Shown here: positions 16,488 to 33,417 of the stretch, piece by piece
How positions within the stretch are numbered: position 1 is the first letter of the stretch
Layout: each line of letters starts with the position of its first letter
Virus record (IMG/VR): IMGVR_UViG_3300045999_010033
Coordinates: 62,001 to 126,000 of that record
DNA length: 64,000 nucleotides
Reading direction: 5' to 3' (one strand)
Made by a program: the position numbers and the translations under genes
The notes under the pieces: generated by a model
Told to the model about the DNA's origin: nothing
The model's input: only the letters and a program-made list of their open reading frames with translations
The model's database searches: none

Positions 16488-16498
16488 ATATAAATATC
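16488..16498 (-). promoter_or_regulatory. putative phage late-promoter motif
   Basis: GATATTTATAT; second copy AATATTTATCT at 16468-16478. Confidence 0.45.
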
Positions 16499-16526: not shown

Positions 16527-17399
16527 TTAAAATATTTCGTATTCAATTTCGGTATCTTTGAACCCCCAATTTTCATCGTTTTGAGATTCCGAAAACAATT
16601 CCACCCAATACCAAGCATCATTATACATAGGTGCTTTTGTTTCGGCTATTTCATGTAAATCTTCCACATTTCCTCCTTGTGGTAAGTGATTTTTATGAGA
16701 CATATGATACATTGGAATATCGTATATCGCTTTTAAGTTGTATCCATTAATAGCTACTTTTTTTTGAATATTCGTATCTACAAAGCAATTATATATCATA
16801 CCTTCTTCTGCTCCTTTGATACTTATCCATATTTTTTTAGAAGCTAATTGAAAATCTCCACAACAATTTATTATACTATAATTATCGTTTGGAGTTACTT
16901 TTGCAGAAAAATACCTTGCAGTTGTCACATTTCTTAAATATTCTCTATACTCTGATAAATTATCTATATTTTTAACCACCTCACTATATTCTATATCCCT
17001 TCTACTAAACGTATAAAATACATTTTCATCACTTCTTTTTATAAGTTCATCTAATTCCTTTTTTGTTGGAGGTATGTTATCAGTTGTTGTAACCGCAATC
17101 CAATCGGCATTCGTTCTTCTTAACGCTAAATTGATTGATAAGTTCGCAGATACATTAGGAACATTCGAATAATCATTGAATATAGTATTATGCACATTTG
17201 ATGATATAACAAAATGCTTTATTTTACCTTCGTGTGGTAACTCATCTATTACTTCATATAACAAACTGTGTGATGGTGAGTTCCAATCAATGTAATTAAC
17301 TTCATCAAATGTATCCAACAAAGCTTTCATATGAATTAAAAACCTTTCTTTTTCTTTATATCCATCGTTTCTACTAAATGTTATAACCGAAGTTTTCAT
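16527..17399 (-). CDS. GT-A fold glycosyltransferase-like protein
   Basis: SRND, IDWNS, INLALRR, TTTDN, GDFQL, YHMSH. Confidence 0.65.
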   Translation of the reverse strand: MKTSVITFSRNDGYKEKERFLIHMKALLDTFDEVNYIDWNSPSHSLLYEVIDELPHEGKIKHFVISSNVHNTIFNDYSNVPNVSANLSINLALRRTNADWIAVTTTDNIPPTKKELDELIKRSDENVFYTFSRRDIEYSEVVKNIDNLSEYREYLRNVTTARYFSAKVTPNDNYSIINCCGDFQLASKKIWISIKGAEEGMIYNCFVDTNIQKKVAINGYNLKAIYDIPMYHMSHKNHLPQGGNVEDLHEIAETKAPMYNDAWYWVELFSESQNDENWGFKDTEIEYEIF

Positions 17400-17411
17400 T
17401 TTAATTTTTTA

Positions 17412-18194
17412 TTATATTGTTGATACACCTGGCTTTTGAACCACTATTGTTGCACATTCTTGCGCGAATTTAATTGCACTTTCTATATTAGAAGATAAAA
17501 TATATTCACAAACTAATCCAGATACAAAGGTATCACCTGCACCCGAAACATCTTTTATCTGAACTTTTTCAACTGGGTATATTTTTCCTTTATGCTGACA
17601 CCCCTTACTTGATAGTGTTATGATTAATTTATCTTCAATATCTAATTCTTTCAAAGAATATTCGGTGTGCTCATACTCCACATGATTTATCTTAATGTAT
17701 GTAGCACTTTTACACCAAGATCCTAATATTTTTTTTGTGTCTATAAACACATTTATATTGTTTTCACATATGAACCTAATATCTTCTTCTTCTAAAAACC
17801 CTTTATCATAATCACTAATAATAATTGCATCTATTTTAGTATCATTATAGATGTTGTTATTTATTTTTTTTAATGTTGAAGAATTTATCGGTGTGGCTTT
17901 ATCGTTAAAATCTACTCTAAGTAATATTTGTCCCGACCTTTCATCAACATATCTTTTTTTAATTATTTTGTTATCATTTTTAATAAAGATAACACTTACA
18001 CCCAGCGCTTCTAAATTGGAAACAACATTTCCTGCCATTCCATCATTCGAAGTTGTGTTGGTTGGATTGAATACTGGAACCGGCGCTTCGGGTGCCAATC
18101 TGATTGCAGTTCCATATACAAATTCATCTACTCCATAATCTCCTATAACCAATATACTGAAATCTTTAAATTTTTCCTTTTTCAAATTTTTCAT
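17412..18194 (-). CDS. HldE/RfaE-type heptose-7-phosphate kinase (PfkB family)
   Basis: RLAPEAPVPV, SDYDKG, DVSGAGDTF. Confidence 0.88.
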   Translation of the reverse strand: MKNLKKEKFKDFSILVIGDYGVDEFVYGTAIRLAPEAPVPVFNPTNTTSNDGMAGNVVSNLEALGVSVIFIKNDNKIIKKRYVDERSGQILLRVDFNDKATPINSSTLKKINNNIYNDTKIDAIIISDYDKGFLEEEDIRFICENNINVFIDTKKILGSWCKSATYIKINHVEYEHTEYSLKELDIEDKLIITLSSKGCQHKGKIYPVEKVQIKDVSGAGDTFVSGLVCEYILSSNIESAIKFAQECATIVVQKPGVSTI

Positions 18195-18744
18195 TTATTA
18201 TTTCCTTTGTTTTTTTGAATCCTATTTCACAATTCGTTTTCCAATGAGAGTGGTCGCCACCATCTGAAACCCATTTATACGCACTAAATTTAACACCATA
18301 TCTTTTACATACTTTTGCAATTGCAAAACACTCCATATCAATTATGGAACACCGCTTTATCATTTCCAAATAATATGGTGAATATTTTATTTTCTGATTT
18401 TCATCGTAAAAATAATCGGTTGTAAAACAACTAATATTAGATTTTGAATCTAAAACTATTTGTTTAGATATTGATTCAAATGGAGTTTTACCATACTCAT
18501 CTAATGGGGTAGTATCTATATCTTGATAAACCAATCCAACTTTGACCACGTCTCCAATGGGCAAAGATAACGATCCACATGAACCGATGTTTATTATTTC
18601 ATCATACCCCAAACTAAATGCCATAGTCGCGGTCATAGCGGCGTTTATTTTACCAACACCACTAAACATTACCGGATATCCTAAAATATTTCCTTGAATA
18701 CCTACTTCATCGGGAACTGCTACTATAAAAACCTTTTTATTCAT
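18166..18744 (-). CDS. mtnN: MTA/SAH nucleosidase-like protein
   Basis: SGVGKINAA, INIGSCG, DMECFA, KWVSD. Confidence 0.75.
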   Translation of the reverse strand: MNKKVFIVAVPDEVGIQGNILGYPVMFSGVGKINAAMTATMAFSLGYDEIINIGSCGSLSLPIGDVVKVGLVYQDIDTTPLDEYGKTPFESISKQIVLDSKSNISCFTTDYFYDENQKIKYSPYYLEMIKRCSIIDMECFAIAKVCKRYGVKFSAYKWVSDGGDHSHWKTNCEIGFKKTKEIINEKFEKGKI

Positions 18745-19213
18745 ATTTAATTAAACTCTTAACATTTGTTGGTTTGTGTAAAAATGTTAAATCAATTAAC
18801 ACTAATTTATCTACCACTTCGTAACCCGCCTTTTTACATAGTATTTCAACCGCCTCCATAGTTCCACCTGTCGCATACACATCATCAACTATAACTACCT
18901 TCCCACTTCCTGGTTGCATTTCTAATATATCCTCACCATATTCCAAAGTGTATGTTTGTTGAATTACCGGTGGTGGTAGTTTTCCTTTTTTTCTACACAT
19001 AATCAAACCACCATTTTTAGTAGATAACGCCGAAGCGAATATAAATCCTCTAGCATCAATACCTACCCAATAATCGGGTTGATTAACTAAATTTCTCATT
19101 TCTTCAATTACCTTTGGAAATAAAGATGATTTTAAAAGTGGAGAAACATCTTTGAACGATATTCCAGTTTTTGGAAAATCGGGTACTTCATTTACAAGTT
19201 CTTTCCAATTCAT
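18737..19213 (-). CDS. apt: adenine phosphoribosyltransferase
   Basis: PDFPKTGISFKD, GIDARGF, RKKGKLP, LEYG, IVDDVYATGGT. Confidence 0.93.
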   Translation of the reverse strand: MNWKELVNEVPDFPKTGISFKDVSPLLKSSLFPKVIEEMRNLVNQPDYWVGIDARGFIFASALSTKNGGLIMCRKKGKLPPPVIQQTYTLEYGEDILEMQPGSGKVVIVDDVYATGGTMEAVEILCKKAGYEVVDKLVLIDLTFLHKPTNVKSLIKYE

Positions 19214-19218
19214 TTTTT

Positions 19219-19698
19219 TTAATTTTTATCTCTTTGTGAAAGTATAGGAGTTTCGGTTGGCCAATTTATATTAATTTTTGAATCTTTCCAATTTAAACTG
19301 AATTGGTTTTCAACATCAGGGTATTCCCCTTCGTATGCCCATTTATAAAAAAATACAGCGTTATCACTTAACACTAAATGTCCATTTCCAAATCCAGGTG
19401 GGATTAATATTTGTTTTTTGTTTGCACCACTTAAAATTATACTATCCCATTTTAAATAAGTTGGGGATGTGGGTCTATTATCTACAACTACAAAATATAT
19501 TTCACCATGTAGACAACTTATTAATTTAGTAGCTTTGAAATCTCCATGAATTCCTCTTAACACATTTTTCTTTGAAACCGCAACTTTATCGTGATTAAAA
19601 AATAATTCGTGTTCACTTTGATTAAATACGGTGTACAATTCGCCCCTATAATCTTCAAACGAATCGGGCTGAAATATTTTAATTTCAGAAAATATCAT
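19219..19698 (-). CDS. rmlC: dTDP-4-dehydrorhamnose 3,5-epimerase family protein
   Basis: FEDYRG, VLRGIH, IPPGFGNGH, WP...LSQRD. Confidence 0.85.
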   Translation of the reverse strand: MIFSEIKIFQPDSFEDYRGELYTVFNQSEHELFFNHDKVAVSKKNVLRGIHGDFKATKLISCLHGEIYFVVVDNRPTSPTYLKWDSIILSGANKKQILIPPGFGNGHLVLSDNAVFFYKWAYEGEYPDVENQFSLNWKDSKININWPTETPILSQRDKN

Positions 19699-20860
19699 TG
19701 TTAAGTATGTTTATTAATTTATCAATTTTTTCTTCCTCCAACGTGGGATAGTTCCCAATGTACCAACCAAAATGATGGACGTGGTCTACATTTTTAAATT
19801 CATCATAATTAAACTTTCCTTTGAAAAACGGTTGTCTAATTTGATTTCCTCCACCTGATAATCCTCTCCTAAATTCGATTTTGTTATCGCTAAGAACTTT
19901 TTCAAGTTTATTTCTAATTTCGTATGAAGGTTCTTTTAAAATTACTATAAAAGCATAATTACATTGTCCCTCTACTTCTAAATTAGTTATATATTTTGTA
20001 GAATCTAATCTTTCTATAAAGTGATTGAAATTTCTAATTCTATTTATATTATTGTTATCGAGTTTTTTAAGTTGAGATAATCCGATAACTGCATTTAATT
20101 CGGTACTTCTGAAATTATGAGAAGGTCTAATGAATATGAAATCTTTATTTAAATCGGGATTTTCATTAATTATTTTTTGTTTAAATTCTTCATTACTCAT
20201 TTCTCGCATCATACCATGAGAACGTAGTGCTCTACATATTTGATAAAAATGCTCATCGTTAGTACATATCATTCCACCTTCTATTGTACTCATATGGTGC
20301 GCAAAGTAAAAACTAAAATTAGAAGCAAATCCAATTGAACCTACCTTTTGTCCTTTGAAAGTTGTACCATGTGATTCACAAACATCTTCAATTAATAATA
20401 TATTTCTTTCTTTACACAATTCAATTATGTCATCTGTCAATGCGTTTATTCCAAGCACGTGTGTAAGAAATATTGCTTTTGTTTTGGGATTTATTGCTGC
20501 TTTTAATTTATCCAAATCAAATGATAGATTTTTTAAATTAATATCAACAAACACCGGTTGAAATCCTGCAAACATTACCGATGCTACATCCGAAATCCAA
20601 GTTAATGGTGGAACTATAATTTCACCTTCACCATGAATGTAATTTAAAGCTAACATAGTTAATTCATTTGCCGATGCCCCTGAATTAACCATTAGATTGT
20701 ATTTTGTCCCTAACCAATCTCCCCATTTATTTTCAAACTCAATAACTTTTGGACCATTGGTTAATTTAGGAATTGGAGTTTGATTTAAAAAAGAAATCAG
20801 AGATTCAATATCCTCTTTATCTATATTATCACTCATTAATGGTAAGTAAAACTGATTCAT
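19685..20860 (-). CDS. DegT/DnrJ-family PLP enzyme, ColD/RfbH-like 3-dehydratase type
   Basis: VNSGASAN, EDVCESHG, SFYFAHHMSTIEGG (His in place of Schiff-base Lys); start moved to MNQFYLPLM. Confidence 0.85.
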   Translation of the reverse strand: MNQFYLPLMSDNIDKEDIESLISFLNQTPIPKLTNGPKVIEFENKWGDWLGTKYNLMVNSGASANELTMLALNYIHGEGEIIVPPLTWISDVASVMFAGFQPVFVDINLKNLSFDLDKLKAAINPKTKAIFLTHVLGINALTDDIIELCKERNILLIEDVCESHGTTFKGQKVGSIGFASNFSFYFAHHMSTIEGGMICTNDEHFYQICRALRSHGMMREMSNEEFKQKIINENPDLNKDFIFIRPSHNFRSTELNAVIGLSQLKKLDNNNINRIRNFNHFIERLDSTKYITNLEVEGQCNYAFIVILKEPSYEIRNKLEKVLSDNKIEFRRGLSGGGNQIRQPFFKGKFNYDEFKNVDHVHHFGWYIGNYPTLEEEKIDKLINILNNDIF

Positions 20861-20867
20861 ATTTATT

Positions 20868-21404
20868 TTATTTTTCTCCATAATAATCACCCCATTCAAC
20901 TAAAATGGTAGGGCGGTTGTCCGTTCTTTCATACGCGTACTGAAATGATTCAAATATCTGATGTGGTTCATCTAATCGTATTATATCAACCCAATCACAC
21001 ATTGCCTTAAATCCACCAGTAAAATCTGCTATGTGCTGATGTTGTGGGTGCAATGGTCTCTGAGACCCAATAGAAGTTCTAATGATTATTTTTGGTGTGT
21101 ATCCACCATCGGACATTATTTTAATTTTATCTAAATGATTAACCAACTGATTTGCTGCTAATAATAAAAAATTCCAACGTGGATAAATTGAAATGGGTAC
21201 AGTGCCATTCAGAGCCATACCTATGCTCATACCCATTTGCATATCTTCGTTAACCGGCATTTCTAACATTTTGTGAGGAGAAACATCTTTAAGAGTGTTT
21301 GTCATAGCAGTACCCGCGTATGTTACTGCTTGTCCTATAAAATATGTGTTTGGTTTTTCATTTAACCAATCCATTGATCTCTTTAGTTCATCAAAGTATT
21401 TCAT
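20868..21404 (-). CDS. TPP enzyme beta-like subunit (pyrimidine-binding domain only)
   Basis: EMPVNE, GMSIGMAL, NQLVN, PQH; no C-terminal domain. Confidence 0.8.
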   Translation of the reverse strand: MKYFDELKRSMDWLNEKPNTYFIGQAVTYAGTAMTNTLKDVSPHKMLEMPVNEDMQMGMSIGMALNGTVPISIYPRWNFLLLAANQLVNHLDKIKIMSDGGYTPKIIIRTSIGSQRPLHPQHQHIADFTGGFKAMCDWVDIIRLDEPHQIFESFQYAYERTDNRPTILVEWGDYYGEK

Positions 21405-21406
21405 AA

Positions 21407-22012
21407 TTAAAATTGTATTCTTTTACCTGCACCGGCGTGTGGATATTTTGTTTCGTATTGATAATATATTATTTTTCTAGTTTCATTTTTGAAGTATAAT
21501 TCACTATTCCATACTTCTTTTGTAAGAGTACACACCGATTTGCCATTATCTTCTATAACATAAGTTATTGGTAAATCGTGATTAACCGCATACTTCCAAT
21601 TTTCAAAGAATGTGCCGGTTTCGGATGTCATATCTCCTACAAAGCACCAAACATGATTTGCTTGTCCTTTACGTTTGATATCCAACGCCATACCGGTTGC
21701 GATAGGAATGTTGCCGGTTACAATGGCGGAGGAATAAATATTGTATTGTGGATAGCAAAGCGTAATAGATTTACCTTCTAAAATATCTTTCTTTACTTGT
21801 TCTTTAGGTACACCTTTGAGTAAACATTGATAATGAGAACGCCAAGTACAAAATACCCAATCGTCTGATTTTACATTTTGAAATATATTAATCATTTGAT
21901 CTTCATTTCCATAATATAAATGAATGGGAGATTTAATCATAGCATTGTTGAAACAATCCGCTATATCATCTTCAAAGGAAATTAATTCATCTTTAGTTAA
22001 AAGATTTCTCAT
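21407..22012 (-). CDS. TPP enzyme alpha-like subunit (E1-alpha/transketolase N-terminal type)
   Basis: PIHL, WRSH, SSAIV, FVGD...VIEDN TPP-binding motif. Confidence 0.85.
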   Translation of the reverse strand: MRNLLTKDELISFEDDIADCFNNAMIKSPIHLYYGNEDQMINIFQNVKSDDWVFCTWRSHYQCLLKGVPKEQVKKDILEGKSITLCYPQYNIYSSAIVTGNIPIATGMALDIKRKGQANHVWCFVGDMTSETGTFFENWKYAVNHDLPITYVIEDNGKSVCTLTKEVWNSELYFKNETRKIIYYQYETKYPHAGAGKRIQF

Positions 22013-23538: not shown

Positions 23539-23545
23539 AATTTTT

Positions 23546-24487: not shown

Positions 24488-24490
24488 ATA

Positions 24491-25225: not shown

Positions 25226-25245
25226 AATAACTGATTTAAGTGTGT

Positions 25246-25256
25246 ATATAAATATA
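25246..25256 (-). promoter_or_regulatory. putative phage late-promoter motif inside the glycan island
   Basis: TATATTTATAT. Confidence 0.5.
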
Positions 25257-25258
25257 TA

Positions 25259-26152: not shown

Positions 26153-27027
26153 TATATCTTTATTAAGAAATCATTGACAGATGTTACAAAATTACTTTTA
26201 GCTATGTGTATGAAGTCATCTTTCCTGTCTATATTGATTAGATAATTTTTATATGGATTATATCTAAATAAATTATTTTCTATAATGACTTCATTATTTA
26301 TTAGATATTGATTTGCGTTAAATCCTCTCATCTTTCCAAGTCTACAGCATTCCATTATAAAAGTATCGTCCATATAATATGCACCCATCTTATTTGGGAT
26401 ATCTACTTTTTTTACCAATTCAGTAGATAAAAGTGTAAACCAACCACTGGCAAATTTAAATTGGTCTATTTTTGTAATTGAAGGGTCTCCCACCAAACCG
26501 GTACTCATATATGGGTCTCTTGAAAAATAATTATTATGAGATGCATCTTCGATTAATGCGTTTTCATTTGTAATAACATCCCATGTCGTATCCCATAATC
26601 TAGTTGTTTCAGGTGTTATTATAAAGTACTTTTCTTTATCTTTTATTATTTTATGAGCTTCCACAATATTGTATAATAAAGTATCGCTGAAAATTATATC
26701 TACATCTAACCATATAAACGCATCAGGTGAATACATCCTTCCTGACCTTCTATGTAAATCGGTACATCCAAGAATTTCTTCATTTTGCGAAACCCAAAAG
26801 TTTGGAGTTGCCCAACTTTGAGTTAAGTGTTCGTAGTTTTTAAGTTTATTAATAAAAAATTGTTTATCAATTTTGCTGTTCTCCCAATCAGTTAAATTAC
26901 AATTTAATACAACTTCAACTGAAAATTGTTCATCGGAAATATATTTACTACTTTTTTTCAATTGAATCAACGTTTGCTCCAATTGATCAATTTCTTGTGG
27001 TAATATATGAATTAATATGTTTATCAT
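26152..27027 (-). CDS. putative GT-A glycosyltransferase
   Basis: FIWLDVD DxD motif; GWFTLLS; DDTF. Confidence 0.55.
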   Translation of the reverse strand: MINILIHILPQEIDQLEQTLIQLKKSSKYISDEQFSVEVVLNCNLTDWENSKIDKQFFINKLKNYEHLTQSWATPNFWVSQNEEILGCTDLHRRSGRMYSPDAFIWLDVDIIFSDTLLYNIVEAHKIIKDKEKYFIITPETTRLWDTTWDVITNENALIEDASHNNYFSRDPYMSTGLVGDPSITKIDQFKFASGWFTLLSTELVKKVDIPNKMGAYYMDDTFIMECCRLGKMRGFNANQYLINNEVIIENNLFRYNPYKNYLINIDRKDDFIHIAKSNFVTSVNDFLIKI

Positions 27028-27728
27028 AAAAAAAATTCAAATAGTTTAGATGCTAATAATGTAATTTTATGATTTTGTTTTAAGTTAAATTGATTATTCA
27101 AAAACATATCAATAGAATCTTTTAGAGCATCATTACATGGAGTAGATAGTTCTAGTAAAATGTCATCATCTATTTTAATTTTTTTACATTTTGGCCCAGA
27201 CCAGTTTCTATCATAGAAAACATGAACATCTACATTTCCATATTTAAAGATTAAAGATAATGAATTTTTTGTTTTATTCAAAATTTTTATATCACTAATA
27301 TCACAATCTCCCAACAAATGTATTAAGATGTATAAATCGTGATACAATAAATCATTAATTAAATTATCTTTAAATGGACCATTTTTTAACCAAATAAATT
27401 CAATAGTTTGTTTGGGTACTGAATTGATATTTTTAATTTCATTTCTTTCTAAGAAGATATTATCTATATATAACGCCACGTTTTGTTGATACGATAGCTG
27501 TATTAATTCTTTTGAAGAAGAATAATTTAATGTTAAAGGTTTTTCACAAAATACATTTGTTTTTTTTAATAAAGCAGATTTGACAATATGATAGTGTTGT
27601 GGTGGTGGTGTCGTCACAAATAAGAAATCAATATCATCGTATGAATTTGGATTTATTATAGGTTTAACGTTGAGTTTTGATTCAATTATTTTTCCCCAAT
27701 AGCCGTACCCTACTATACCGATTTTCAT
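27024..27728 (-). CDS. Gfo/Idh/MocA oxidoreductase (short)
   Basis: IGIVGYGYWG, H, VFCEKP, YHD. Confidence 0.85.
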   Translation of the reverse strand: MKIGIVGYGYWGKIIESKLNVKPIINPNSYDDIDFLFVTTPPPQHYHIVKSALLKKTNVFCEKPLTLNYSSSKELIQLSYQQNVALYIDNIFLERNEIKNINSVPKQTIEFIWLKNGPFKDNLINDLLYHDLYILIHLLGDCDISDIKILNKTKNSLSLIFKYGNVDVHVFYDRNWSGPKCKKIKIDDDILLELSTPCNDALKDSIDMFLNNQFNLKQNHKITLLASKLFEFFL

Positions 27729-28741
27729 GTGGAAATTAATTTTTCTTTTACTTCTCTTGCCACATCAACGCAAGTTGTAATTTTTCCAGAAAAAATAGTT
27801 ATGAGTTTCGGATATGATTTTGATATCATAACTTTTGATAATCGCTCATCGTTTGTAGTTATCGGCAACGCTCTTATAGTTTGCCAATAATCAACAAAAC
27901 TTACATTATTTAAAAACGGAAAATAATTAATAGAATCATTTATTAAATGCTGTAGATTATCTTTTACATCTTTAGCACAACTTAATTCATTTTCATAAGT
28001 TTCTTTTAAAATAGAATATTTGGCATGATACAATAAAAATGTATTAGATGTATTTCCTTTTGGCATTATACTACAAAATGGGCCATCCATCACTGTAATT
28101 CCTATTTTAGGAGAATTATATGTAAATATGGGAACAATAACATCTTGCAATTTAAATTCAATACATTCTGCTCCTAAAAATTTATTAATTACATTTATAT
28201 TTGCGTATGAACAATTTATAATATAATCATAATCAGTATGATTAACAGAAAAAAAAGATGTATTTAATTTTAATTTAATGTTTGTTTTACTTATTTTTTT
28301 CTCTATTAACTCTTTAAATATTTCCCAATCAAAAATTGGTTCATTTACTTTAAACGAAGTATCTATTAAATTATTGTTTAAATAAAGTGAATTAGGAAAT
28401 TCAGATTTATATTCTATATTTGCATTGTTACAAAATTGTATGTAATCATACGACGATACATGACTACCATGTTTAGCTATTGCATAATAATTTGGAAAAT
28501 TTTTAACAATACACTCGGAATAATTTTCTAAAAAAGAATTTAATCCATCTAAACTTTGTAGAGCAGTTTCTAAACTTCTGGGATAATGATATCCATAATG
28601 GATTCTATTATGATTGTTTTTGGATGCTCCCATCATTATTGATGAATTAGTTTCAATTAGCGTTACATCAAAATTACAATTAAATAGTTCCAAAGCAATA
28701 GAGCACCCAAACGCACCTGCACCAACAACTAAAACTTTCAT
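27725..28741 (-). CDS. FAD-dependent oxidoreductase
   Basis: VVGAGAFG, ASKNNHNRIHYGYHYPRS, MDGPF, SGKI. Confidence 0.85.
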   Translation of the reverse strand: MKVLVVGAGAFGCSIALELFNCNFDVTLIETNSSIMMGASKNNHNRIHYGYHYPRSLETALQSLDGLNSFLENYSECIVKNFPNYYAIAKHGSHVSSYDYIQFCNNANIEYKSEFPNSLYLNNNLIDTSFKVNEPIFDWEIFKELIEKKISKTNIKLKLNTSFFSVNHTDYDYIINCSYANINVINKFLGAECIEFKLQDVIVPIFTYNSPKIGITVMDGPFCSIMPKGNTSNTFLLYHAKYSILKETYENELSCAKDVKDNLQHLINDSINYFPFLNNVSFVDYWQTIRALPITTNDERLSKVMISKSYPKLITIFSGKITTCVDVAREVKEKLIST

Positions 28742-28804
28742 TATTTTTAACTTTACAATTAATTGTTTTTGATAGTTAACTCTTCTTGCAATCCTTTCGT
28801 AATT

Positions 28805-29218
28805 TTAAATTCCCGATAGATGTTTTGTTTTATCATAATTTAAAATTTGACTAGTTGATTTGTTTGGTACTCTGGAAAAATAAAATATATTAGGAATATA
28901 ATATCGCCCTATTATATTTTTATTTTTATAATCATCTCCTATAACCATTATATCCGGTGTGTATTCTTTTATTCTATCTATAAGTTCATTATCGGATGAA
29001 AATGTTACAATAGAATCTACATATTTAATTGAAGATAAGAATTTTATTCTATCTTTCAAAATATTATATGGACGATTTTCTCCTTTTTTTTCTTTAATTC
29101 TTTCATCGGTATCTAATCCAACTCTTACGTTTCCCAACGAATTAGCGTATTCAAGTAAGTTAATGTGTCCAATATGAAGAACATCAAACGAACCATTTAC
29201 CCAAACACGTTTTACCAT
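28805..29218 (-). CDS. HldE/RfaE domain II-type nucleotidyltransferase
   Basis: NGSFDVLHIGH, KGENRP, GDDY, STS. Confidence 0.85.
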   Translation of the reverse strand: MVKRVWVNGSFDVLHIGHINLLEYANSLGNVRVGLDTDERIKEKKGENRPYNILKDRIKFLSSIKYVDSIVTFSSDNELIDRIKEYTPDIMVIGDDYKNKNIIGRYYIPNIFYFSRVPNKSTSQILNYDKTKHLSGI

Positions 29219-29610
29219 GATATTTCCCAATCTTTAAAATCTGCAGCCAAACAATCAATCTTATAATCCTTTCTGCCTCCCATAACTTCTTGAATTTTGT
29301 TTTTAGCAGTATTACGAATGCCATTCAATCCATGTGTTAGTTCAAGATTATTACCATCTTTAATTCCTTTACGATAGTTGGATTCGTTGTGCCAAATATG
29401 AAGATTCATTTGTGATAAAACCACTATTGCTCGGATTGTTTCGGCTGTAATTGGTTCTTTTGTTTCATTCAAATATAATTGAATATCGTGCACAATATCT
29501 GCAATTTCTTTTGCATACTCATCTTTGTGTTCGGCAATAAACACTTCTTTCAATTGAATAATAGATAATCTATCTATTAGTTCACTTAATGTTGGTAAAT
29601 ACTTTCTCAT
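29212..29610 (-). CDS. helical protein of glycan clusters (DUF4254/DUF6165-like)
   Basis: ELIDRLSI..LK, NLHIWHNE, NGIRNTAKNKI. Confidence 0.55.
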   Translation of the reverse strand: MRKYLPTLSELIDRLSIIQLKEVFIAEHKDEYAKEIADIVHDIQLYLNETKEPITAETIRAIVVLSQMNLHIWHNESNYRKGIKDGNNLELTHGLNGIRNTAKNKIQEVMGGRKDYKIDCLAADFKDWEISW

Positions 29611-30233
29611 AATGTTTCGTAATAAGAGTTTTGTTTTTCTTGTCTTTTTATATCCTTATCGTGCTTTATGCAGAATAATGGTTCTGCGGGGAAGTTGCTG
29701 TATTTTTGATAACCGTATACCCTTTCATGTACTTTGTTTTTCCAAAGTATTTCATCCTTTCTTTTATATAATCGGGTTTGATAATCTGGAAAATTGACCC
29801 ACCCACGTTCGTTTACATTCCATCCCCATTTTTTTATATGGTAATCGGTAAGACCGGTTACCGTATTAATACGTGGAATAAAAAATAGGTCAACATCATC
29901 ATTATCATTTAGGATATCCTCTAAATTAACCATCAATTCGGCATCAATCATTTCATCTGCATCTATTTGATAAATCCAATCACCCTTACAATGTGAATTG
30001 AGAAAGTTTTTCCAAGATGAAAAATCTCCATTAAATTCAGAAATGATAAGAGTAAAATCGTCTTTACCATCTGCGCATATCATCAAAAATTCCTCTAACT
30101 CTTTTGGTGCTTTTGGTGAATCCAATAGAACAACTATTTCCGCGTTATCTCCCTTATAGTTTTTAAGGTGATTGATTAATCTAATCGTTTCATCAAATTC
30201 ATTTGAAACTGTGATAGCGTAACTTATTTTCAT
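29607..30233 (-). CDS. family 2 glycosyltransferase
   Basis: ISYAITVSNE, QIDADE, PDYQTRL, VHE. Confidence 0.85.
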   Translation of the reverse strand: MKISYAITVSNEFDETIRLINHLKNYKGDNAEIVVLLDSPKAPKELEEFLMICADGKDDFTLIISEFNGDFSSWKNFLNSHCKGDWIYQIDADEMIDAELMVNLEDILNDNDDVDLFFIPRINTVTGLTDYHIKKWGWNVNERGWVNFPDYQTRLYKRKDEILWKNKVHERVYGYQKYSNFPAEPLFCIKHDKDIKRQEKQNSYYETL

Positions 30234-30239
30234 TAAAAC

Positions 30240-30722
30240 TTATTTTTTACTTTTAGGTTCTACTTTTGGCTTTGGTTTTGCCTTTTGAATTAATTTTGAT
30301 TTAGGCACTATTTTTTCTACTTCCATTTTTAATTCTAAAATACGTGTAATTCCACTCAATTTATAAGTTCTATATGCATTATTATTAATTGATGGTACTT
30401 TTTTTACAGAATCATTATACGTGTTTCTCGCACTTCCTTTTATTTCTAATTTTTCAGTTTGTTCGTTATATAATTTGCCAAACATTCTTTTAACTATATT
30501 GGGACTAACATTGGATACTTTTACACAATGGACTATATCTTTTGTTTTTGATACAAACAATGTGTAAACAATTGGTGCTTCCATATCCCGATATTTTACT
30601 CTATCTCCATCGGTGTATTTATATTCTTTAATAAGATAAAATTTATTTCGTTCCATTTTTTGTGGAAGAATGATGTTTTTATCATTTATAAATGGTTTAT
30701 ATTTTAGATTATATTCCGACAT
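30240..30722 (-). CDS. hypothetical protein, weak resemblance to T4 gp2-like DNA end protector
   Basis: FYLIKEYKY ... PIVY ... AYRTY pattern; function uncertain. Confidence 0.4.
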   Translation of the reverse strand: MSEYNLKYKPFINDKNIILPQKMERNKFYLIKEYKYTDGDRVKYRDMEAPIVYTLFVSKTKDIVHCVKVSNVSPNIVKRMFGKLYNEQTEKLEIKGSARNTYNDSVKKVPSINNNAYRTYKLSGITRILELKMEVEKIVPKSKLIQKAKPKPKVEPKSKK

Positions 30723-30724
30723 TT

Positions 30725-32038
30725 TTAAGAATCAATTTTTGGCAATTCTAATTTTTTAAGTTTTGGTAGTTCTATTTTTTTGAGATTAGGTAGTTGTAGC
30801 TTTACAGCTTTCGGCTCTACACTCCTGTCATAAATAGAATATTTTTTGAATATTCCGTCCAATTCTTGTGTCATTTTTGAAAGGGTAAAATTTGCTCTAT
30901 TGTATTCTCCCAACTTTTCAGAATCCTTTTTATACTTTTCGTAATTCTTATATACATCTTTTAGTTTGATAGTCGCGTTAGAAACATTTACATTAAACCA
31001 GCTTGATTCTTTTAAAAGAAAATCATCTGCGGCAGATTCGTGCACGTTTTTCAATTCCCCTTCAAGTAAAACTGCTCCTTCTTTTAAGAAATCTAAATGC
31101 CCACTCCAATTTGATGCAATTACGGGTTTGCCAGTTAAAGAAAACTCTAAAAGTGGGCGACCAAATCCTTCACCTTTTGTGAAAGATACCATTGCTTTTA
31201 TTTTTTTATGATTATAAAGTCCGTTCATTTGTTTTGCCGAAAGGTCACCATGTAACAAATACACTGGAACTTTACCATAATCAGAACCTAACGCGTTTTT
31301 AATACTACGAACAATGTGCTCCCTATCCCGCACACTAAATGATGCGGTTGATGTTTTCAAAATTAACGCAGGTTTTACCTTTTCATTTTTAAATGCTAAA
31401 GAAAAAGTTTTAAGTAGTATTCCTACATTTTTACGATCTTCACCCACATTACCTTTCAACCAATGTCCTACGAATAAAAAAGCAAAATCTTCTTTTATTT
31501 CATCCAATTCAGAAACTTTTTGTATATCTTTTGTGGCAAAATCATTTTCATCGTAACCTTCAAAAAGAATTTCAACTGGCTTTTCTATTTGATGATTTCT
31601 TATAAATTGTTGTGTATCACGATTATGTTCGGAGTATATACTTTCGATTAGTGAACGCTTTGAATGTTCCGAAACTGTGATTATCAAATCCATTCGATTA
31701 CATCCTTGTATCCAACTTAGTGGGGATATAGTGGTTTCTATTGCCGCAGTTACACCAATATTATAATGACCTATTGGTTGAAATTCATTTGGAACTGTCA
31801 TTTGTATGAAGATATCCGGTTTTCTTTCTGGTGCAGGTACTACATTATCTATAATCCATTTGTGAAAGGCATTTTCATATGAAAGTGCATCCATTGGGGT
31901 TTGTCCCCACCTAGTAGAAATAATCTTTACTTCAAATTTATCCAATTTCCAAATGGAATGTAATAAATCTCGTGCATGGTCTCCATACCCGCTGCGTGTC
32001 GCTATTGGTGCTTGATATAACAATGTTGGTTTACTCAT
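30725..32038 (-). CDS. family 4 (GT-B) glycosyltransferase
   Basis: RSGYG, DRKN, GEGFGRPLLE, PVIASNWSG. Confidence 0.88.
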   Translation of the reverse strand: MSKPTLLYQAPIATRSGYGDHARDLLHSIWKLDKFEVKIISTRWGQTPMDALSYENAFHKWIIDNVVPAPERKPDIFIQMTVPNEFQPIGHYNIGVTAAIETTISPLSWIQGCNRMDLIITVSEHSKRSLIESIYSEHNRDTQQFIRNHQIEKPVEILFEGYDENDFATKDIQKVSELDEIKEDFAFLFVGHWLKGNVGEDRKNVGILLKTFSLAFKNEKVKPALILKTSTASFSVRDREHIVRSIKNALGSDYGKVPVYLLHGDLSAKQMNGLYNHKKIKAMVSFTKGEGFGRPLLEFSLTGKPVIASNWSGHLDFLKEGAVLLEGELKNVHESAADDFLLKESSWFNVNVSNATIKLKDVYKNYEKYKKDSEKLGEYNRANFTLSKMTQELDGIFKKYSIYDRSVEPKAVKLQLPNLKKIELPKLKKLELPKIDS

Positions 32039-33417
32039 ATACTATACAATTCAAATTTTTTCTTTGGTTTCCAATTTTCAAATGTAGATTCGATTCCATC
32101 AATAAGTGTTTGGCACATATTTTGTGTGCTCAATCCACCATCACCCATCATCCATTCTCTGCCATTCAATCCCCATGCTTTCCTTTGCCATTTGGGCATT
32201 AAATACCAATAACGAATAAGTGGTGCCACATCATCAAAATCTACTTTATCATCAAAAATATATGGTGTTGGTACGGATCCATTTACAGAACGAGTTGGCC
32301 ATACCGGTGTTACCCATTCTCCCCAAGTTACTGCTGATTCATAATTCTTTTTATCATGCAAAGACCCAATCTTTACATAGTCTTCTGCCGTTAGATACTT
32401 ATCGGTCCCTTTTAATTTAAAACCACATTGGTCTTGCAATCCACCAGTAACGTTTACAATGATAGGAGTTCCGGCCATTACCGATTCTGCGGTTGCTAAT
32501 CCAAATCCTTCATTAGATGCTAAATTGATTGTTACATCCGCAATATTGTATAGATAATTGAGCTCGGTTTCTGTCCATCTCCCATCATCAAAGATTACAT
32601 GGGCATCCGGCATACAATGTTGTACCATTGTTGGTAAATCAGTTCCATTTTCATCAACTGGCTGAGTGTGCATCAACATACATACTCTATCTCTTTTTTC
32701 TTCAGGTAATCCTAATCTGAATTGTTCGAATGCAAGTAACGCATCCATTGGTTGCTTTCTTCTAATGTTTCTATTATTCCAATACAATATAAAATCGTAT
32801 TCTTTATCTCCTAAAATCTTTTTTCTAAATTCTTCAGGAACATCAATCGGCTTGTATAAATCGGGATTAATACCATGCGGCACATAACTAACTTGCCAAT
32901 CTTTTGGTTGCTTCCATTGTGATTGTGCATCCCATCCCCACACACGACGTGTTATACCATATGTTTGCTTTGAAATACATCCAATCCAATCACAACTTTC
33001 ATAGTAATCACGATTATATTTTGGATCTGGCAAATCATCCCAAATATGATAAAACAACAATGGAACTGATTGGCGAATTTCATGTTCAATATCATACAAC
33101 CATATCCAATATCGTGGGTCAGTAAAGTGTAGAATGGCATCTGGCTTTTCTCGCATCAATAACGCACGAATTATATCCGCGTTACCGTAACCATCACACG
33201 GATACAACTTTACATTAGCATCCTGTACCCCAGTTACATCACGTACACTTTGGGTTAAATCCATTATTTGACCTTGCTCTGGGTGTTGTATCGCTGCTCC
33301 CAATTGAACCCAATCATATTTATCGACCGTACCTAAAACCAATTGTTTTGAAATGTTAGCAATGCCAGATGGCATTCTTAAATCATCGGAAAGTAACAAA
33401 ATTTTCTTTTTAGCCAT
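32035..33417 (-). CDS. family 4 (GT-B) glycosyltransferase
   Basis: VPHG, NRNIRRK, NEGFGLATAES, GTPII. Confidence 0.88.
   Translation of the reverse strand: MAKKKILLLSDDLRMPSGIANISKQLVLGTVDKYDWVQLGAAIQHPEQGQIMDLTQSVRDVTGVQDANVKLYPCDGYGNADIIRALLMREKPDAILHFTDPRYWIWLYDIEHEIRQSVPLLFYHIWDDLPDPKYNRDYYESCDWIGCISKQTYGITRRVWGWDAQSQWKQPKDWQVSYVPHGINPDLYKPIDVPEEFRKKILGDKEYDFILYWNNRNIRRKQPMDALLAFEQFRLGLPEEKRDRVCMLMHTQPVDENGTDLPTMVQHCMPDAHVIFDDGRWTETELNYLYNIADVTINLASNEGFGLATAESVMAGTPIIVNVTGGLQDQCGFKLKGTDKYLTAEDYVKIGSLHDKKNYESAVTWGEWVTPVWPTRSVNGSVPTPYIFDDKVDFDDVAPLIRYWYLMPKWQRKAWGLNGREWMMGDGGLSTQNMCQTLIDGIESTFENWKPKKKFELYSI

What the first reader, a model, noticed from the sequence alone, without database searches (positions are those of the whole stretch)
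16527..33417. 17 kb glycan-biosynthesis island, apparently under a late-type motif
About six glycosyltransferases (GT2, two GT4, GT10-like, two GT-A-like), nucleotide-sugar enzymes, oxidoreductases and a methyltransferase. The inner part looks more AT-rich. TAT(A/T)(T/C)TTATAT-type motifs lie at its head (33634) and inside (25246), and I found no host-type promoter within it. Inference: late glycosylation of virion proteins or the host surface with an unusual sugar. DNA glycosylation is an alternative.
Basis: partly seen in the sequence, partly recalled or inferred. Interest (0 to 1): 0.65.

Follow-up and report, generated by a model that had tools for sequence, protein, structure and literature searches.

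The report
Late-promoter glycan island in a lake phage
A 17-kb block in a 221-kb T4-like lake phage, probably of Flavobacteria, encodes six glycosyltransferases and a route to a rare branched deoxy-sugar behind the promoter motif used by the virion genes; the glycan most likely goes onto phage particles, but its target is unproven.

Summary
Window 16527-33417 is 21 co-directional genes. They include six glycosyltransferases: two GT4, one GT2, one marginal GT10-like and two GT-A folds shown by modelling. There is also a sugar-nucleotide pathway: an HldA-like kinase, an HldC-like nucleotidyltransferase, a C4-dehydrogenase-type SDR, a ColD-type 3-dehydratase with the diagnostic His, an RmlC-like epimerase, a ThDP E1 alpha/beta pair, a B12 radical-SAM enzyme and a methyltransferase. 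An MTA/SAH nucleosidase and an adenine phosphoribosyltransferase sit with them.

It occurs 25 times in 12 kb of intergenic DNA, against about 1 expected and 0 antisense. It precedes the tail sheath, fibre, baseplate-like and capsid operons, and no replication gene. It heads the island in many relatives, including cultured Flavobacterium phage immuto.

The island is mosaic. A conserved glycosyltransferase head is followed by exchangeable sugar modules, and the five-gene core occurs in bacterial O-polysaccharide loci.

DNA glycosylation is disfavoured. Immuto DNA has canonical dA, dC and dT, and a complete island-bearing relative has no thymidylate-synthase-family gene.

Best reading, confidence about 0.4: late cytoplasmic glycosylation of virion proteins. 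Host envelope glycan is the main rival. This is a new variant of a known kind.

The parts
33635..33643 (-). Head copy of the phage-specific promoter-like motif (variant ATACTTATA), 15 nt before the small ORF that opens the island.
   Evidence: The perfect ATATTTATA sits at the same place, between the PD-(D/E)XK nuclease gene and the first GT4, in L024, L026, L028, L029, L031, L032, L043 and L046 and in Flavobacterium phage immuto.
33422..33619 (-). Small ORF (65 aa) of unknown function; it ends 4 nt before GT4a.
   Evidence: Read; no Pfam hit. A 60-aa ORF holds the same position in phage immuto.
32035..33417 (-). GT4a, GT-B glycosyltransferase (460 aa); first gene of the conserved head.
   Evidence: Glycos_transf_1 8.8e-9; PHROG glycosyltransferase 1.5e-21. 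It is 72-75% identical in near relatives and 34-45% in distant ones, 43% in Flavobacterium phage immuto and 52% in Microcystis phage Mel-JY01.
30725..32038 (-). GT4b, GT-B glycosyltransferase (437 aa).
   Evidence: Glycos_transf_1 3.4e-6; PHROG glycosyltransferase 3.2e-21; kept next to GT4a in relatives.
30240..30722 (-). Unknown 160-aa protein with a Lys/Pro-rich tail. An ORF holds this place between GT4b and GT2 in relatives.
   Evidence: No family hit. There is a weak structural resemblance (TM 0.54, on a poor model) to viral clusters that partly carry Phage_T4_gp2; this is a lead only.
29607..30233 (-). GT2, small GT-A glycosyltransferase (208 aa); last gene of the conserved head.
   Evidence: Glycos_transf_2 4.1e-10; conserved in relatives and in immuto.
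29212..29610 (-). Unknown 132-aa protein, the most conserved ORF of the island (83-95% identity in relatives).
   Evidence: It falls in virus-only clusters, with a distant link to DUF6165.
28805..29230 (-). Sugar-phosphate nucleotidyltransferase, HldC/RfaE-domain-II-like (also TagD-like).
   Evidence: CTP_transf_like 1.4e-13; rfaE_dom_II 5.7e-27, below that model's cut-off.
27725..28741 (-). FAD-dependent oxidoreductase (DAO family).
27024..27728 (-). Short GFO/IDH/MocA-type NAD(P) oxidoreductase; the family includes sugar 3-dehydrogenases.
26152..27027 (-). GT-A fold glycosyltransferase (291 aa), no sequence-family hit.
   Evidence: Model pLDDT 88.2, pTM 0.89. All top PDB matches are GT-A enzymes (ppGalNAc-T2, TarP/TarS, SpsA, K4CP, WrtF), with probability 1.0 and TM about 0.43-0.50.
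25259..26152 (-). GT10-like (fucosyltransferase-like) protein.
   Evidence: Glyco_transf_10 3.2e-5, 24.1 bits against a cut-off of 23.9; 48-72% identical in relatives.
25247..25255 (-). Inner perfect ATATTTATA copy in the 33-nt spacer, 21 nt before the ATG of the methyltransferase gene.
   Evidence: The same placement before the methyltransferase or SDR gene is seen in L027, L030, L034 and L043.
24491..25225 (-). SAM-dependent methyltransferase.
   Evidence: Methyltransf_24/31.
23546..24487 (-). SDR predicted to be an NDP-heptose C4-dehydrogenase.
   Evidence: Full-length match to PDB 6VO6/6VO8, E 2.5e-102. Those entries being C. jejuni Cj1427 is from my memory and was not confirmed. Cj1427's function is taken from PMC10680097.
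22009..23538 (-). B12-binding radical SAM enzyme; predicted C-methylation or rearrangement of the sugar.
   Evidence: Radical_SAM + B12-binding; CX3CX2C is invariant (C230, C234, C237); no equivalog match.
21407..22012 (-). ThDP enzyme, E1 alpha-like half (201 aa).
   Evidence: E1_dh 6.5e-15; the GD...N cofactor motif aligns with PDH E1 alpha.
20868..21404 (-). ThDP enzyme, E1 beta-like / transketolase pyrimidine-binding half (178 aa).
   Evidence: Transket_pyr 2.3e-8; PDH E1 beta 5.6e-12.
19685..20899 (-). ColD-type PMP-dependent NDP-4-keto-sugar 3-dehydratase.
   Evidence: Best PDB match is ColD (2GMS), E 7.9e-53. His is aligned at ColD His188 ('AHH' against 'SHH') where aminotransferases carry Lys. 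RfbH is the best NCBIfam hit.
19219..19698 (-). RmlC-family cupin epimerase (C5 or C3/C5).
   Evidence: dTDP_sugar_isom 6.5e-41.
18737..19213 (-). Adenine phosphoribosyltransferase.
   Evidence: NF002636 1.9e-48, 164 bits, above the cut-off of 125.
18166..18744 (-). MTA/SAH (5'-deoxyadenosine) nucleosidase-like protein.
   Evidence: PNP_UDP_1 2.2e-16; nucleosidase models 1e-16 to 1e-17, below their cut-offs.
17412..18194 (-). pfkB kinase, HldA/RfaE-domain-I-like (heptose-7-phosphate-kinase-like).
   Evidence: rfaE_dom_I 1.5e-40, below the cut-off.
16527..17399 (-). GT-A fold glycosyltransferase (290 aa); last gene of the island.
   Evidence: Model pLDDT 70, C-terminal 50 residues poor. Top PDB matches are K4CP, SpsA, Chlorella virus hyaluronan synthase and WrtF, E down to 3e-10. 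In relatives it is often the C-terminal half of a 560-575-aa protein.
16489..16497 (-). Next ATATTTATA copy; marks the downstream boundary and the start of the next transcription unit.
15076..15789 (-). Its membership in the island is an inference.
   Evidence: DUF2608 9.9e-7; sequence; absent from the relatives' loci. No GmhA (SIS_2) is found in the genome.

Best explanation
The island is a self-contained, soluble (cytoplasmic) glycosylation system. It belongs to the phage's own late-type regulon.

Shown. There are two probable transcription units. The first runs from the head motif at 33635 and contains the small ORF, GT4a, GT4b, a 160-aa protein, GT2, a 132-aa protein, a nucleotidyltransferase, two oxidoreductases, a GT-A and a GT10-like protein. 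The second runs from the perfect motif at 25247 and contains a methyltransferase, the sugar cassette and a last GT-A.

Inferred chemistry. An HldA-like kinase and an HldC-like nucleotidyltransferase activate a heptose (or another sugar phosphate). The SDR oxidises C4. The ColD-type enzyme removes the 3-OH. The RmlC-like cupin epimerises. Instead of a C4 reductase, a ThDP E1 alpha/beta pair adds a carbon branch to the 4-keto group, in the manner of yersiniose biosynthesis. The B12 radical-SAM enzyme and the methyltransferase alkylate further. The nucleosidase and APRT clear the SAH and 5'-deoxyadenosine that these SAM enzymes produce and salvage the adenine.

Inferred target. Six soluble glycosyltransferases build an oligosaccharide on an acceptor that is conserved across the phage clade, most likely virion protein(s). 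The outer sugars are swapped between phages by module exchange.
For: Regulon. ATATTTATA occurs 25 times on the sense strand and 0 times antisense in intergenic DNA, against about 1 expected. It lies 15-35 nt before the starts of the tail sheath, collagen-like fibre and baseplate-like genes and at the head of the capsid operon. No copy precedes a replication gene; the only copy in window 34.5-57 kb lies inside a coding region. Those genes instead have Bacteroidota-type promoters at 48277 and 57221. The same 9-mer behaves alike in the complete relative G001 (24 of 25 sense, 21 intergenic). In cultured Flavobacterium phage immuto it sits before the baseplate operon and a tail-spike gene. It heads the island in eight or more relatives and in immuto.

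Chemistry. A Cj1427-type dehydrogenase plus a PLP C3-dehydratase make a 3-deoxy-4-keto-heptose in vitro (PMC10680097).

Soluble system. No island protein has a membrane-spanning segment beyond the hydrophobic FAD-binding N-terminus of DAO. No protein in the whole genome has the many transmembrane helices of a Wzx, Wzy, WaaL or WecA.

Conserved acceptor. The GT4a-GT4b-x-GT2 head keeps its place after the clamp loader and nuclease in phages whose clamp loader is only 40-46% identical. The sugar genes behind it differ.

Not DNA.

A possible acceptor. Three structural proteins carry 144-741 residues of Gly-Ser/Thr triplets.
Against: No glycan has been observed on any virion of this clade. No transcript data exist, since no RNA run holds the phage. 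'Late' therefore rests on motif association alone, and read-through from the co-directional replication genes is possible.

The head copy in this phage is a one-base variant. The nearest relatives (L015-L023) have no motif between the nuclease gene and GT4a.

The same motif also starts a unit that encodes two outer-membrane-barrel proteins. The regulon is therefore not purely structural.

The Gly-Ser/Thr fibre proteins are absent from G001, which has the island. They cannot be the general acceptor.

In bacteria the core cassette serves a surface polysaccharide.

The kinase, nucleotidyltransferase and nucleosidase score below their models' curated cut-offs. The heptose assignment leans on my unverified memory of what PDB 6VO6 is.
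Confidence: 0.42

Rival explanations
1. Host envelope remodelling. The phage supplies a rare NDP-sugar and peripheral glycosyltransferases that act on the host's lipid-linked O-polysaccharide, capsule or LPS core. The host's own carrier, transporter and ligase export the product. The cell surface or its debris changes, giving superinfection exclusion or protecting progeny from adsorbing to debris.
For: The nearest cellular copy of the five-gene cassette (Bacteroidales MAG contig L051, sister to the phage clade) lies between Wzm/Wzt ABC O-polysaccharide exporter genes and glycosyltransferases. The cassette is common in the genomes of SAR11, Verrucomicrobiota and Burkholderiales. O-antigen glycosyltransferases are normally peripheral proteins without transmembrane segments (general knowledge). 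Similar clusters in pelagimyophages were read this way (PMC7029224). This phage also encodes two outer-membrane barrels just downstream.
Against: Neither the island nor the genome encodes an initiating phosphoglycosyltransferase, flippase, ABC exporter, polymerase or ligase. The locus shares its motif with virion genes and not with early genes, which is late for exclusion. The glycosyltransferase head is conserved across divergent phages whose hosts' surface glycans would be expected to differ.
Confidence: 0.27
2. DNA hypermodification. The glycosyltransferases put the sugar(s) on a hydroxylated or hydroxymethylated pyrimidine in phage DNA before packaging.
For: The island directly follows the clamp-loader and nuclease genes. 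A kinase, a cytidylyltransferase-like enzyme and a GT-B are known to heptosylate 5hmC in a metaviromic cluster (bioRxiv 10.1101/2023.12.21.572611). This genome has a divergent thymidylate-synthase-family gene (44507-45205) with Asp at the ThyA-N177 place, which is cytosine-type. Known DNA glycosyltransferases resemble ordinary GT4 enzymes.
Against: Flavobacterium phage immuto has the same head (nuclease, small ORF, GT, GT, hypothetical, GT2, then sugar genes). Its virion DNA gives canonical dA, dC and dT, with only dG replaced by formyl-preQ1 (bioRxiv 10.1101/2023.04.13.536721). The complete relative G001 carries the head and core but has no thymidylate-synthase-family gene. The Tet/JBP search there found nothing but had no positive control. 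Relatives use different DNA chemistries: QueC in G001 and immuto, none in this genome. Six glycosyltransferases exceed any known DNA glycan.
Confidence: 0.06
3. Another soluble acceptor. The glycan is built on a non-virion target: a host or phage cytoplasmic protein, a lipid or small-molecule product, or a nucleotide signal of a defence system.
For: All enzymes are soluble. GT4a gives a marginal hit to 'GT4 in conflict systems' (27.8 against 26 bits). The phage carries a Thoeris inhibitor (Tad3) elsewhere. Two conserved island proteins, of 132 aa and 160 aa, have no known function.
Against: Nothing points to a specific target. A six-glycosyltransferase, roughly ten-enzyme sugar route is large for a signalling or counter-defence modification. 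The shared motif with virion genes fits an assembly-stage role better.
Confidence: 0.15

Closest known systems
[quoted passage not shown] LMO8
   Same: The order is the same: PD-(D/E)XK nuclease, small ORF, GT of about 460-480 aa (43% identical to GT4a), second GT, small hypothetical, GT2, then sugar-modifying genes. ATATTTATA lies in the spacer before the small ORF.
   Different: The sugar module differs. Immuto has two WecE-type aminotransferases, a methyltransferase, a mannosyltransferase, a PglB-like 'pilin glycosylation protein', an epimerase and a WcaA-type GT. It has no radical-SAM/ThDP/ColD cassette; the B12 radical-SAM protein has no close match in 50,697 phage records. Neither locus has a tested function.
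LPS-like gene clusters of pelagimyophages and cyanomyophages (Zaragoza-Solas et al. 2020, PMC7029224)
   Same: These are T4-like aquatic myophages with hypervariable clusters of glycosyltransferases, rfaE-type genes and radical-SAM cassettes. Their function has been inferred only.
   Different: Those clusters lie mainly in the tail-fibre 'host recognition cluster', and GT8 dominates. That study could not find late promoters. Here the locus follows the clamp loader, has a conserved GT4-GT4-GT2 head and carries a defined promoter-like motif.
Heptose-modification pathways of Campylobacter jejuni capsules (Cj1427 C4-dehydrogenase, PLP C3-dehydratase, C5 or C3/C5 epimerases, C4 reductases; PMC10680097)
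   Same: Three enzymes match: an SDR close to PDB 6VO6 (E 2.5e-102), a ColD-type 3-dehydratase with the catalytic His, and a cupin epimerase.
   Different: No C4 reductase is present. A ThDP E1 alpha/beta pair and a B12 radical-SAM enzyme take its place. Activation is by HldA/HldC-like (ADP-heptose-type) enzymes, not HddA/HddC. The product is predicted to be C-branched and is not a known capsule heptose.
Yersiniose-type branched 3,6-dideoxyhexose biosynthesis (3-dehydrase, then ThDP-dependent YerE adds a two-carbon branch at C4); cited from my own knowledge
   Same: The logic is the same: a 4-keto-3-deoxy NDP-sugar is followed by a ThDP-dependent C-C bond at C4 in place of reduction.
   Different: The ThDP enzyme here is a split E1 alpha/beta type and not a YerE (acetolactate-synthase-like) homologue. 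There is an extra B12 radical-SAM step. The chemistry has not been tested.
Virus-encoded protein glycosylation: chlorovirus and mimivirus glycan clusters (PMC9614988) and mycobacteriophage virion O-glycosylation (Freeman et al. 2023, from memory)
   Same: The virus carries its own glycosyltransferases and rare-sugar pathways, acts in the cytoplasm, and is independent of host export machinery.
   Different: No glycan has been demonstrated here. No homology to those viral glycosyltransferases was tested beyond generic fold.
Phage DNA-glycosylation gene clusters (thymidylate-synthase homologue or 5mYOX plus glycosyltransferases; bioRxiv 10.1101/2023.12.21.572611 and 10.1101/2025.06.16.659550)
   Same: GT-B and GT-A enzymes sit next to replication genes, with kinase and nucleotidyltransferase partners.
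   Different: The base-hydroxylating partner does not co-occur with the island. The cultured relative's DNA is not glycosylated.

Membership tests
T4-type late promoter (TATAAATA, gp55/gp33-dependent) | Sense-strand consensus TATAAATA at about -10 | tested here: not met
   The intergenic motif on the sense strand is ATATTTATA. TATAAATA occurs on the sense strand in intergenic DNA only twice.
T4-type late promoter (TATAAATA, gp55/gp33-dependent) | Precedes virion structural genes and is absent before replication genes | tested here: met
   The same holds in G001 and in phage immuto.
T4-type late promoter (TATAAATA, gp55/gp33-dependent) | Recognised by a phage late sigma factor; transcripts start a few bases downstream late in infection | not testable with these tools
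   No RNA run holds the phage. A gp55/gp33 homologue was not searched for.
Phage DNA-glycosylation cluster | Co-occurrence with an enzyme that makes 5-hydroxy- or 5-hydroxymethyl-pyrimidine (thymidylate-synthase homologue or TET/JBP) | tested here: not met
   G000 has a divergent cytosine-type homologue 11 kb away. The complete island-bearing G001 has no PF00303 member, and immuto has only ThyA. The Tet_JBP search had no positive control.
Phage DNA-glycosylation cluster | Glycosylated nucleosides in virion DNA | tested here: not met
   This rests on the literature for the cultured relative only: immuto DNA gives dA, dC, dT and formyl-preQ1. It was not tested for this phage.
Bacterial O-antigen / capsule biosynthesis locus | NDP-sugar synthesis genes together with several glycosyltransferases | tested here: met
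Bacterial O-antigen / capsule biosynthesis locus | Initiating phosphoglycosyltransferase plus Wzx/Wzy or Wzm/Wzt export and a ligase | tested here: not met
   The island has no transmembrane proteins. No polytopic protein of that kind exists in the 221-kb genome. The cellular homologue locus L051 does have Wzm/Wzt.
C. jejuni-type NDP-heptose modification pathway | C4-dehydrogenase (Cj1427-type) or 4,6-dehydratase | tested here: met
   E 2.5e-102 over the full length to PDB 6VO6/6VO8. The identity of that entry as Cj1427 is from memory.
C. jejuni-type NDP-heptose modification pathway | PLP/PMP C3-dehydratase with His in place of the Schiff-base Lys | tested here: met
   Alignment to ColD: 'AHH' against 'SHH' at His188.
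C. jejuni-type NDP-heptose modification pathway | Terminal NADPH C4-reductase | tested here: not met
   The island has only one SDR. A ThDP pair and a radical-SAM enzyme occupy that place.
C. jejuni-type NDP-heptose modification pathway | Heptose substrate supply (GmhA isomerase, kinase, GmhB phosphatase, nucleotidyltransferase) | tested here: inconclusive
   The kinase and nucleotidyltransferase are HldA/HldC-like but score below their curated cut-offs. No SIS_2/GmhA is found in the genome. A HAD phosphatase-like gene lies outside the island.
Cobalamin-dependent radical SAM methyltransferases | N-terminal B12-binding domain plus a CX3CX2C radical-SAM core | tested here: met
   The reaction (methylation or another type) is not assignable: best equivalog scores are far below their cut-offs.
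Virus-encoded virion protein glycosylation | Glycan covalently bound to a virion protein and dependent on viral glycosyltransferases | not testable with these tools
   It needs purified virions. Only indirect support exists: the shared motif, soluble enzymes and a conserved head.

The most novel reading that the evidence does not exclude
A widespread clade of T4-like phages of Bacteroidota, cultured phage immuto among them, autonomously glycosylates its own virion late in infection. A conserved GT4-GT4-GT2 'primer' set builds the base of the glycan. Interchangeable sugar cassettes then give each phage lineage a different outer glycan, a kind of phage 'serotype'. In this lineage the cassette makes a previously undescribed 3-deoxy-4-C-branched higher-carbon sugar through a natural Cj1427-type, ColD-type, ThDP E1 alpha/beta and B12 radical-SAM pathway. 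The same cassette is used by SAR11, Verrucomicrobiota and others for surface polysaccharides, so the phage would wear a bacterial-type sugar.
Probability: 0.3. Interest if true: 0.8.

Novelty: new variant of a known kind. Interest (0 to 1): 0.55.

Why it matters
If the glycan goes on the virion, tailed phages of abundant aquatic Bacteroidota would join giant viruses and a few mycobacteriophages in carrying their own protein-glycosylation machinery. Module swapping would be a visible evolutionary mechanism. It could affect adsorption, grazing or enzyme resistance, and how hosts recognise phages.

Three results stand whatever the target.

1. The five-gene cassette points to an uncharacterised branched deoxy-sugar made by many environmental bacteria, SAR11 included. 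It consists of a C4-dehydrogenase-type SDR, a B12 radical-SAM enzyme, a split ThDP E1 pair and a ColD-type dehydratase. It pairs two enzymes that have so far been combined only in vitro (PMC10680097).

2. The phage packages a nucleosidase and APRT with its SAM-consuming enzymes. This is a tidy example of by-product clearance carried by a virus.

3. ATATTTATA gives a usable late-type promoter consensus for this phage clade, for which T4 rules fail.

A cultured relative, phage immuto on Flavobacterium sp. LMO8, makes all of this directly testable.

Tried and rejected
- Megablast of the island against 50,697 phage records found nothing.
- Sigma-70 promoter and intrinsic-terminator scans were at or below chance and are not informative, since the host is probably Bacteroidota.
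- RNA evidence: no RNA run holds the stretch. Laying four lake-water DNA runs showed only near-identical, fragmented contigs at low depth and one 2-nt indel after 25239. This shows the island recurs in independent lakes but says nothing about expression.
- Tet_JBP and TGT searches found nothing, but their controls failed. Tet_JBP matched none of the control genomes, and the TGT model missed DpdA in immuto. Both are void.
- The thymidylate-synthase-like gene was first taken as support for DNA glycosylation. That was rejected as a link to the island after the co-occurrence test and the immuto nucleoside data.
- Gly-Ser/Thr collagen-like fibre proteins were considered as the general acceptor. The idea was weakened because G001 has the island but no such repeats. 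They stay a candidate for this phage only.
- Atlas searches for the 132-aa and 160-aa proteins gave only viral hypothetical clusters.
- The large protein search on the SDR returned more than 120 clusters at 87-92% identity, named only 'nucleoside-diphosphate-sugar epimerase'. It did not confirm the Cj1427 assignment. Paper searches for the PDB code also failed.
- A SAR11 host was considered because SAR11 holds the cassette at 60-67% identity. A Bacteroidota host is now preferred, for four reasons: the immuto locus, the sister Bacteroidales contig, two TonB-dependent-receptor-like genes, one with a CarboxypepD_reg domain, and A-rich leaders without Shine-Dalgarno sequences.

Full report
**Setting.** The window is bases 62001-126000 of a 221,095-bp IMG/VR virus record rated 100% complete. 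Of 299 ORF-called genes, 267 lie on the minus strand. The genome has T4-type replication genes (clamp loader gp44/gp62, family-B polymerase, DnaB-like helicase, RecA/UvsX-like), a Gp23-type capsid gene and a tail sheath gene. It is far from any sequenced phage: the best clamp-loader identity is 47%. The island stretch recurs almost unchanged in lake-water metagenomes of at least eight studies.

The host is probably a member of Bacteroidota. This is an inference from four observations:
- The same locus exists in cultured Flavobacterium phage vB_FspM_immuto.
- The nearest cellular copy of the island's core is on a Bacteroidales MAG contig.
- The phage carries two TonB-dependent-receptor-like genes, one with a CarboxypepD_reg domain.
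- Leaders are A-rich without Shine-Dalgarno sequences, and two spacers before replication genes carry TTTG...TAnnTTTG promoters.

**The observation.**
- Twenty-one tightly packed minus-strand ORFs fill 16527-33417.
- Family scans name two GT4, one GT2 and one GT10-like protein that only just passes its cut-off. They also name a nucleotidyltransferase, DAO and GFO/MocA oxidoreductases, a methyltransferase, an SDR, a B12 radical-SAM protein, a split E1 alpha/beta-like ThDP enzyme, a DegT/RfbH-family protein, an RmlC-like cupin, an adenine phosphoribosyltransferase, an MTA/SAH-nucleosidase-like protein and an HldA-like pfkB kinase.
Models built on alignments of relatives (pLDDT 88 and 70) match only GT-A glycosyltransferases. 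The count of six glycosyltransferases stands.
- The inner part (25259-30722) has GC 0.271 against 0.351 for the genome.

**The motif.**
- In this AT-rich DNA the plain count is unremarkable. Strand and position are not.
- Of 35 copies, 31 are on the sense strand.
- Twenty-five sense copies and no antisense copy lie in the 12 kb of intergenic DNA. A first-order Markov model of that DNA gives 1.08 +/- 1.10, with a maximum of 5 in 300 simulations.
- The copies sit 15-35 nt before start codons. They are concentrated before structural genes: the tail sheath, two collagen-like fibre proteins, a baseplate-like protein, a connector-like protein and the operon that contains the major capsid gene.
- No copy lies in a spacer of the replication block at window 34.5-57 kb; the one copy there (45914) is inside a gene.
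- The motif is not T4's TATAAATA.
- The same 9-mer behaves the same way in a complete 169-kb relative (24 of 25 sense, 21 intergenic). In cultured phage immuto it sits before the baseplate operon and a tail-spike gene.
- In the island there is a perfect copy 21 nt before the methyltransferase gene (25247-25255). A one-base variant lies before the small ORF that opens the island (33635-33643).
- In eight or more relatives and in immuto the perfect motif occupies that head position. In four relatives it also precedes the methyltransferase or SDR gene.

I take this as good evidence that the island belongs to the phage-specific, late-type regulon. It is not proof of timing. No RNA data exist, all genes are co-directional, and the nearest relatives lack the head copy.

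**What the enzymes say about the sugar.**
- The DegT-family protein is not an aminotransferase. Its best solved relative is ColD (E 7.9e-53), and it has His where ColD has catalytic His188 and aminotransferases have Lys.
- The SDR matches PDB 6VO6/6VO8 over its full length (E 2.5e-102). From memory these are C. jejuni Cj1427, the GDP-heptose C4-dehydrogenase. I could not confirm the PDB identity with the tools.
- Cj1427 plus a PLP C3-dehydratase give a 3-deoxy-4-keto-heptose in vitro (PMC10680097).
- The kinase and nucleotidyltransferase resemble the two halves of HldE, the ADP-heptose enzyme, though below the curated cut-offs.
- There is no C4-reductase. In its place are a split ThDP enzyme that keeps the cofactor motif and a B12 radical-SAM enzyme with an intact cluster motif.

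The most economical reading is an inference: a nucleotide-activated heptose (or hexose) is oxidised at C4, 3-deoxygenated, epimerised, C-branched at C4 as in yersiniose biosynthesis, and then alkylated. The nucleosidase and APRT fit as clearance of SAH and 5'-deoxyadenosine from the SAM-dependent steps and recovery of adenine.

**Evolution.**
- Homologues of the radical-SAM gene at 74-84% identity occur on 23 viral contigs.
- Across those contigs the core proteins (SDR, radical SAM, E1a, E1b, ColD-like) are 70-93% identical, while the clamp loader on the same contigs is only 40-46% identical. The cassette therefore moves between phage lineages.
- The phage radical-SAM proteins form one supported clade (SH-aLRT 95). 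An 8-kb 'MAG' contig nests inside it, and a Bacteroidales contig is its sister.
- The five-gene cassette without any of the phage-specific genes is found in SAR11, Verrucomicrobiota, Burkholderiales, Nitrospira, cyanobacteria and others.
- In the sister contig it lies in a Wzm/Wzt O-polysaccharide locus.
- Behind the conserved head (GT4a, GT4b, small protein, GT2), near relatives carry other sugar genes: Glyco_trans_1_2, a HAD-nucleotidyltransferase fusion, an FkbM methyltransferase and a DegT protein. Immuto carries a bacillosamine-like set.

**The target.** Three acceptors were weighed.

*DNA.* This looked attractive for three reasons. The island follows the clamp loader. A kinase, a cytidylyltransferase-like enzyme and a GT-B heptosylate 5hmC in another phage cluster. 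This genome has a cytosine-type thymidylate-synthase homologue. Three findings count against it:
- The complete relative G001 carries the island but has no thymidylate-synthase-family gene.
- Relatives use different DNA chemistries, with QueC in G001 and immuto and not here.
- Immuto virion DNA contains canonical dA, dC and dT, with only dG replaced by formyl-preQ1.

*Host envelope.* This is supported by the cellular context of the cassette and by earlier readings of similar clusters. Against it, the phage encodes no initiating transferase, flippase, exporter or ligase anywhere. The locus shares its signal with virion genes. The glycosyltransferase head is conserved across phages that must meet different host glycans.

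*Virion proteins.* These fit the late-type signal, the soluble enzymes and the conserved head with variable outer sugars. This phage offers striking candidates: three structural proteins with 144-741 residues of Gly-Ser/Thr triplets. They are not general, because G001 lacks them.

I therefore put virion glycosylation at about 0.4, host envelope at about 0.27, another soluble acceptor at about 0.15 and DNA at about 0.06. About 0.1 is left unassigned.

**Novelty.** Glycan gene clusters in aquatic T4-like phages are known as a phenomenon, and immuto's genes are annotated as glycosyltransferases. The new points are:
- the defined promoter-like motif that ties the locus to the structural regulon;
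- the architecture of a conserved head with exchangeable modules;
- the specific cassette and its predicted branched sugar;
- the by-product-clearance pair;
- the evidence against DNA as target.

This makes it a new variant of a known kind, with a cultured relative available for direct tests.

Noticed in passing
window 10474-13749 and 7124-9376 (minus strand): Two TonB-dependent-receptor-like outer-membrane barrels are encoded by the phage. One is 1091 aa with CarboxypepD_reg + OMP_b-brl_4. The other is 750 aa with Plug + OMP_b-brl_3 and an N-terminal hydrophobic segment. They lie in the unit that starts at the ATATTTATA copy at 16489. This is unusual cargo for a lytic phage.
   Followed up: partly
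window 44507-45205, with 43000-44505 and 45211-46782: A divergent thymidylate-synthase-family protein (232 aa) has its best PDB match in MilA, a CMP hydroxymethylase. The catalytic Cys is aligned. Asp sits at the ThyA-N177 place, Ser at L143 and Arg at D169 by my reading of the alignment. It is flanked by an asparagine-synthase-like amidotransferase and an N6_N4-methylase-like protein. This may be a separate cytosine-C5 DNA-modification module. A normal ThyA is at 1096-2211.
   Followed up: partly
G001:C1:109065-109697 (L143) and NC_055915 18622-19287 (L142): The complete relative G001 and phage immuto carry QueC (7-deazaguanine route). The window's genome does not. Related phages that share the glycan locus therefore use different DNA modifications.
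   Followed up: partly
window 3250-3795: A homologue of Tad3, a type I Thoeris inhibitor (PF25185, 2.2e-36).
   Followed up: no
window 49460-51322: A class II (B12-dependent) ribonucleotide-reductase-like protein. Together with the B12 radical-SAM enzyme, the phage has two cobalamin-dependent enzymes.
   Followed up: no
window 48277-48308 and 57221-57252 (minus strand): Two similar TTTG-N-TAnnTTTG (Bacteroidota sigma-A type) sites lie in spacers before replication-block genes. They are candidate host-type early or middle promoters. The only sense-strand match inside the island (22314-22345) is within the radical-SAM coding region.
   Followed up: partly
L004:1219-5403, L004:13540-16218 and genome 157020-163925 (outside the window): Three large structural proteins (1394, 892 and 2301 aa) contain 741, 144 and 525 residues of proline-free Gly-(Ser/Thr)-(Ser/Ala) 'collagen-like' triplets. 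PHROGs call the first two tail-fibre or collagen-like. G001 has none.
   Followed up: partly
L029:16090-17808, L024:16834-18555 and others: In many relatives the homologue of the last GT-A (16527-17399) is the C-terminal half of a 555-575-aa protein. The N-terminal domain of about 280 aa is missing in this phage.
   Followed up: no
L028 9933-15683; L043 13891-19264; L046 11494-19130: Several relatives have 4-8 kb of extra DNA inserted between radical SAM and E1a, or between E1b and the ColD-like gene, splitting the otherwise contiguous cassette. The content was not examined.
   Followed up: no
window 13831-14370: A 179-aa protein with an N-terminal helix-turn-helix-like stretch and a C-terminal Cys-rich motif. 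Homologues at 30-39% identity follow the island in most relatives. The four genes between it and the island in this phage (16105-14378) are lineage-specific insertions, including a HAD-like and an APS-kinase-like P-loop protein.
   Followed up: no
window 23546-24487: The phage-type SDR is very common in metagenomes. More than 120 distinct 90%-identity clusters are 87-92% identical to it, some on contigs of 120-170 kb.
   Followed up: no
PP395634.1 83441-84929: Microcystis phage Mel-JY01 (190 kb, host given as Microcystis elabens) has the closest cultured GT4a homologue (52%) and a 42%-identical clamp loader. This sits oddly with the Bacteroidota host inferred here.
   Followed up: no
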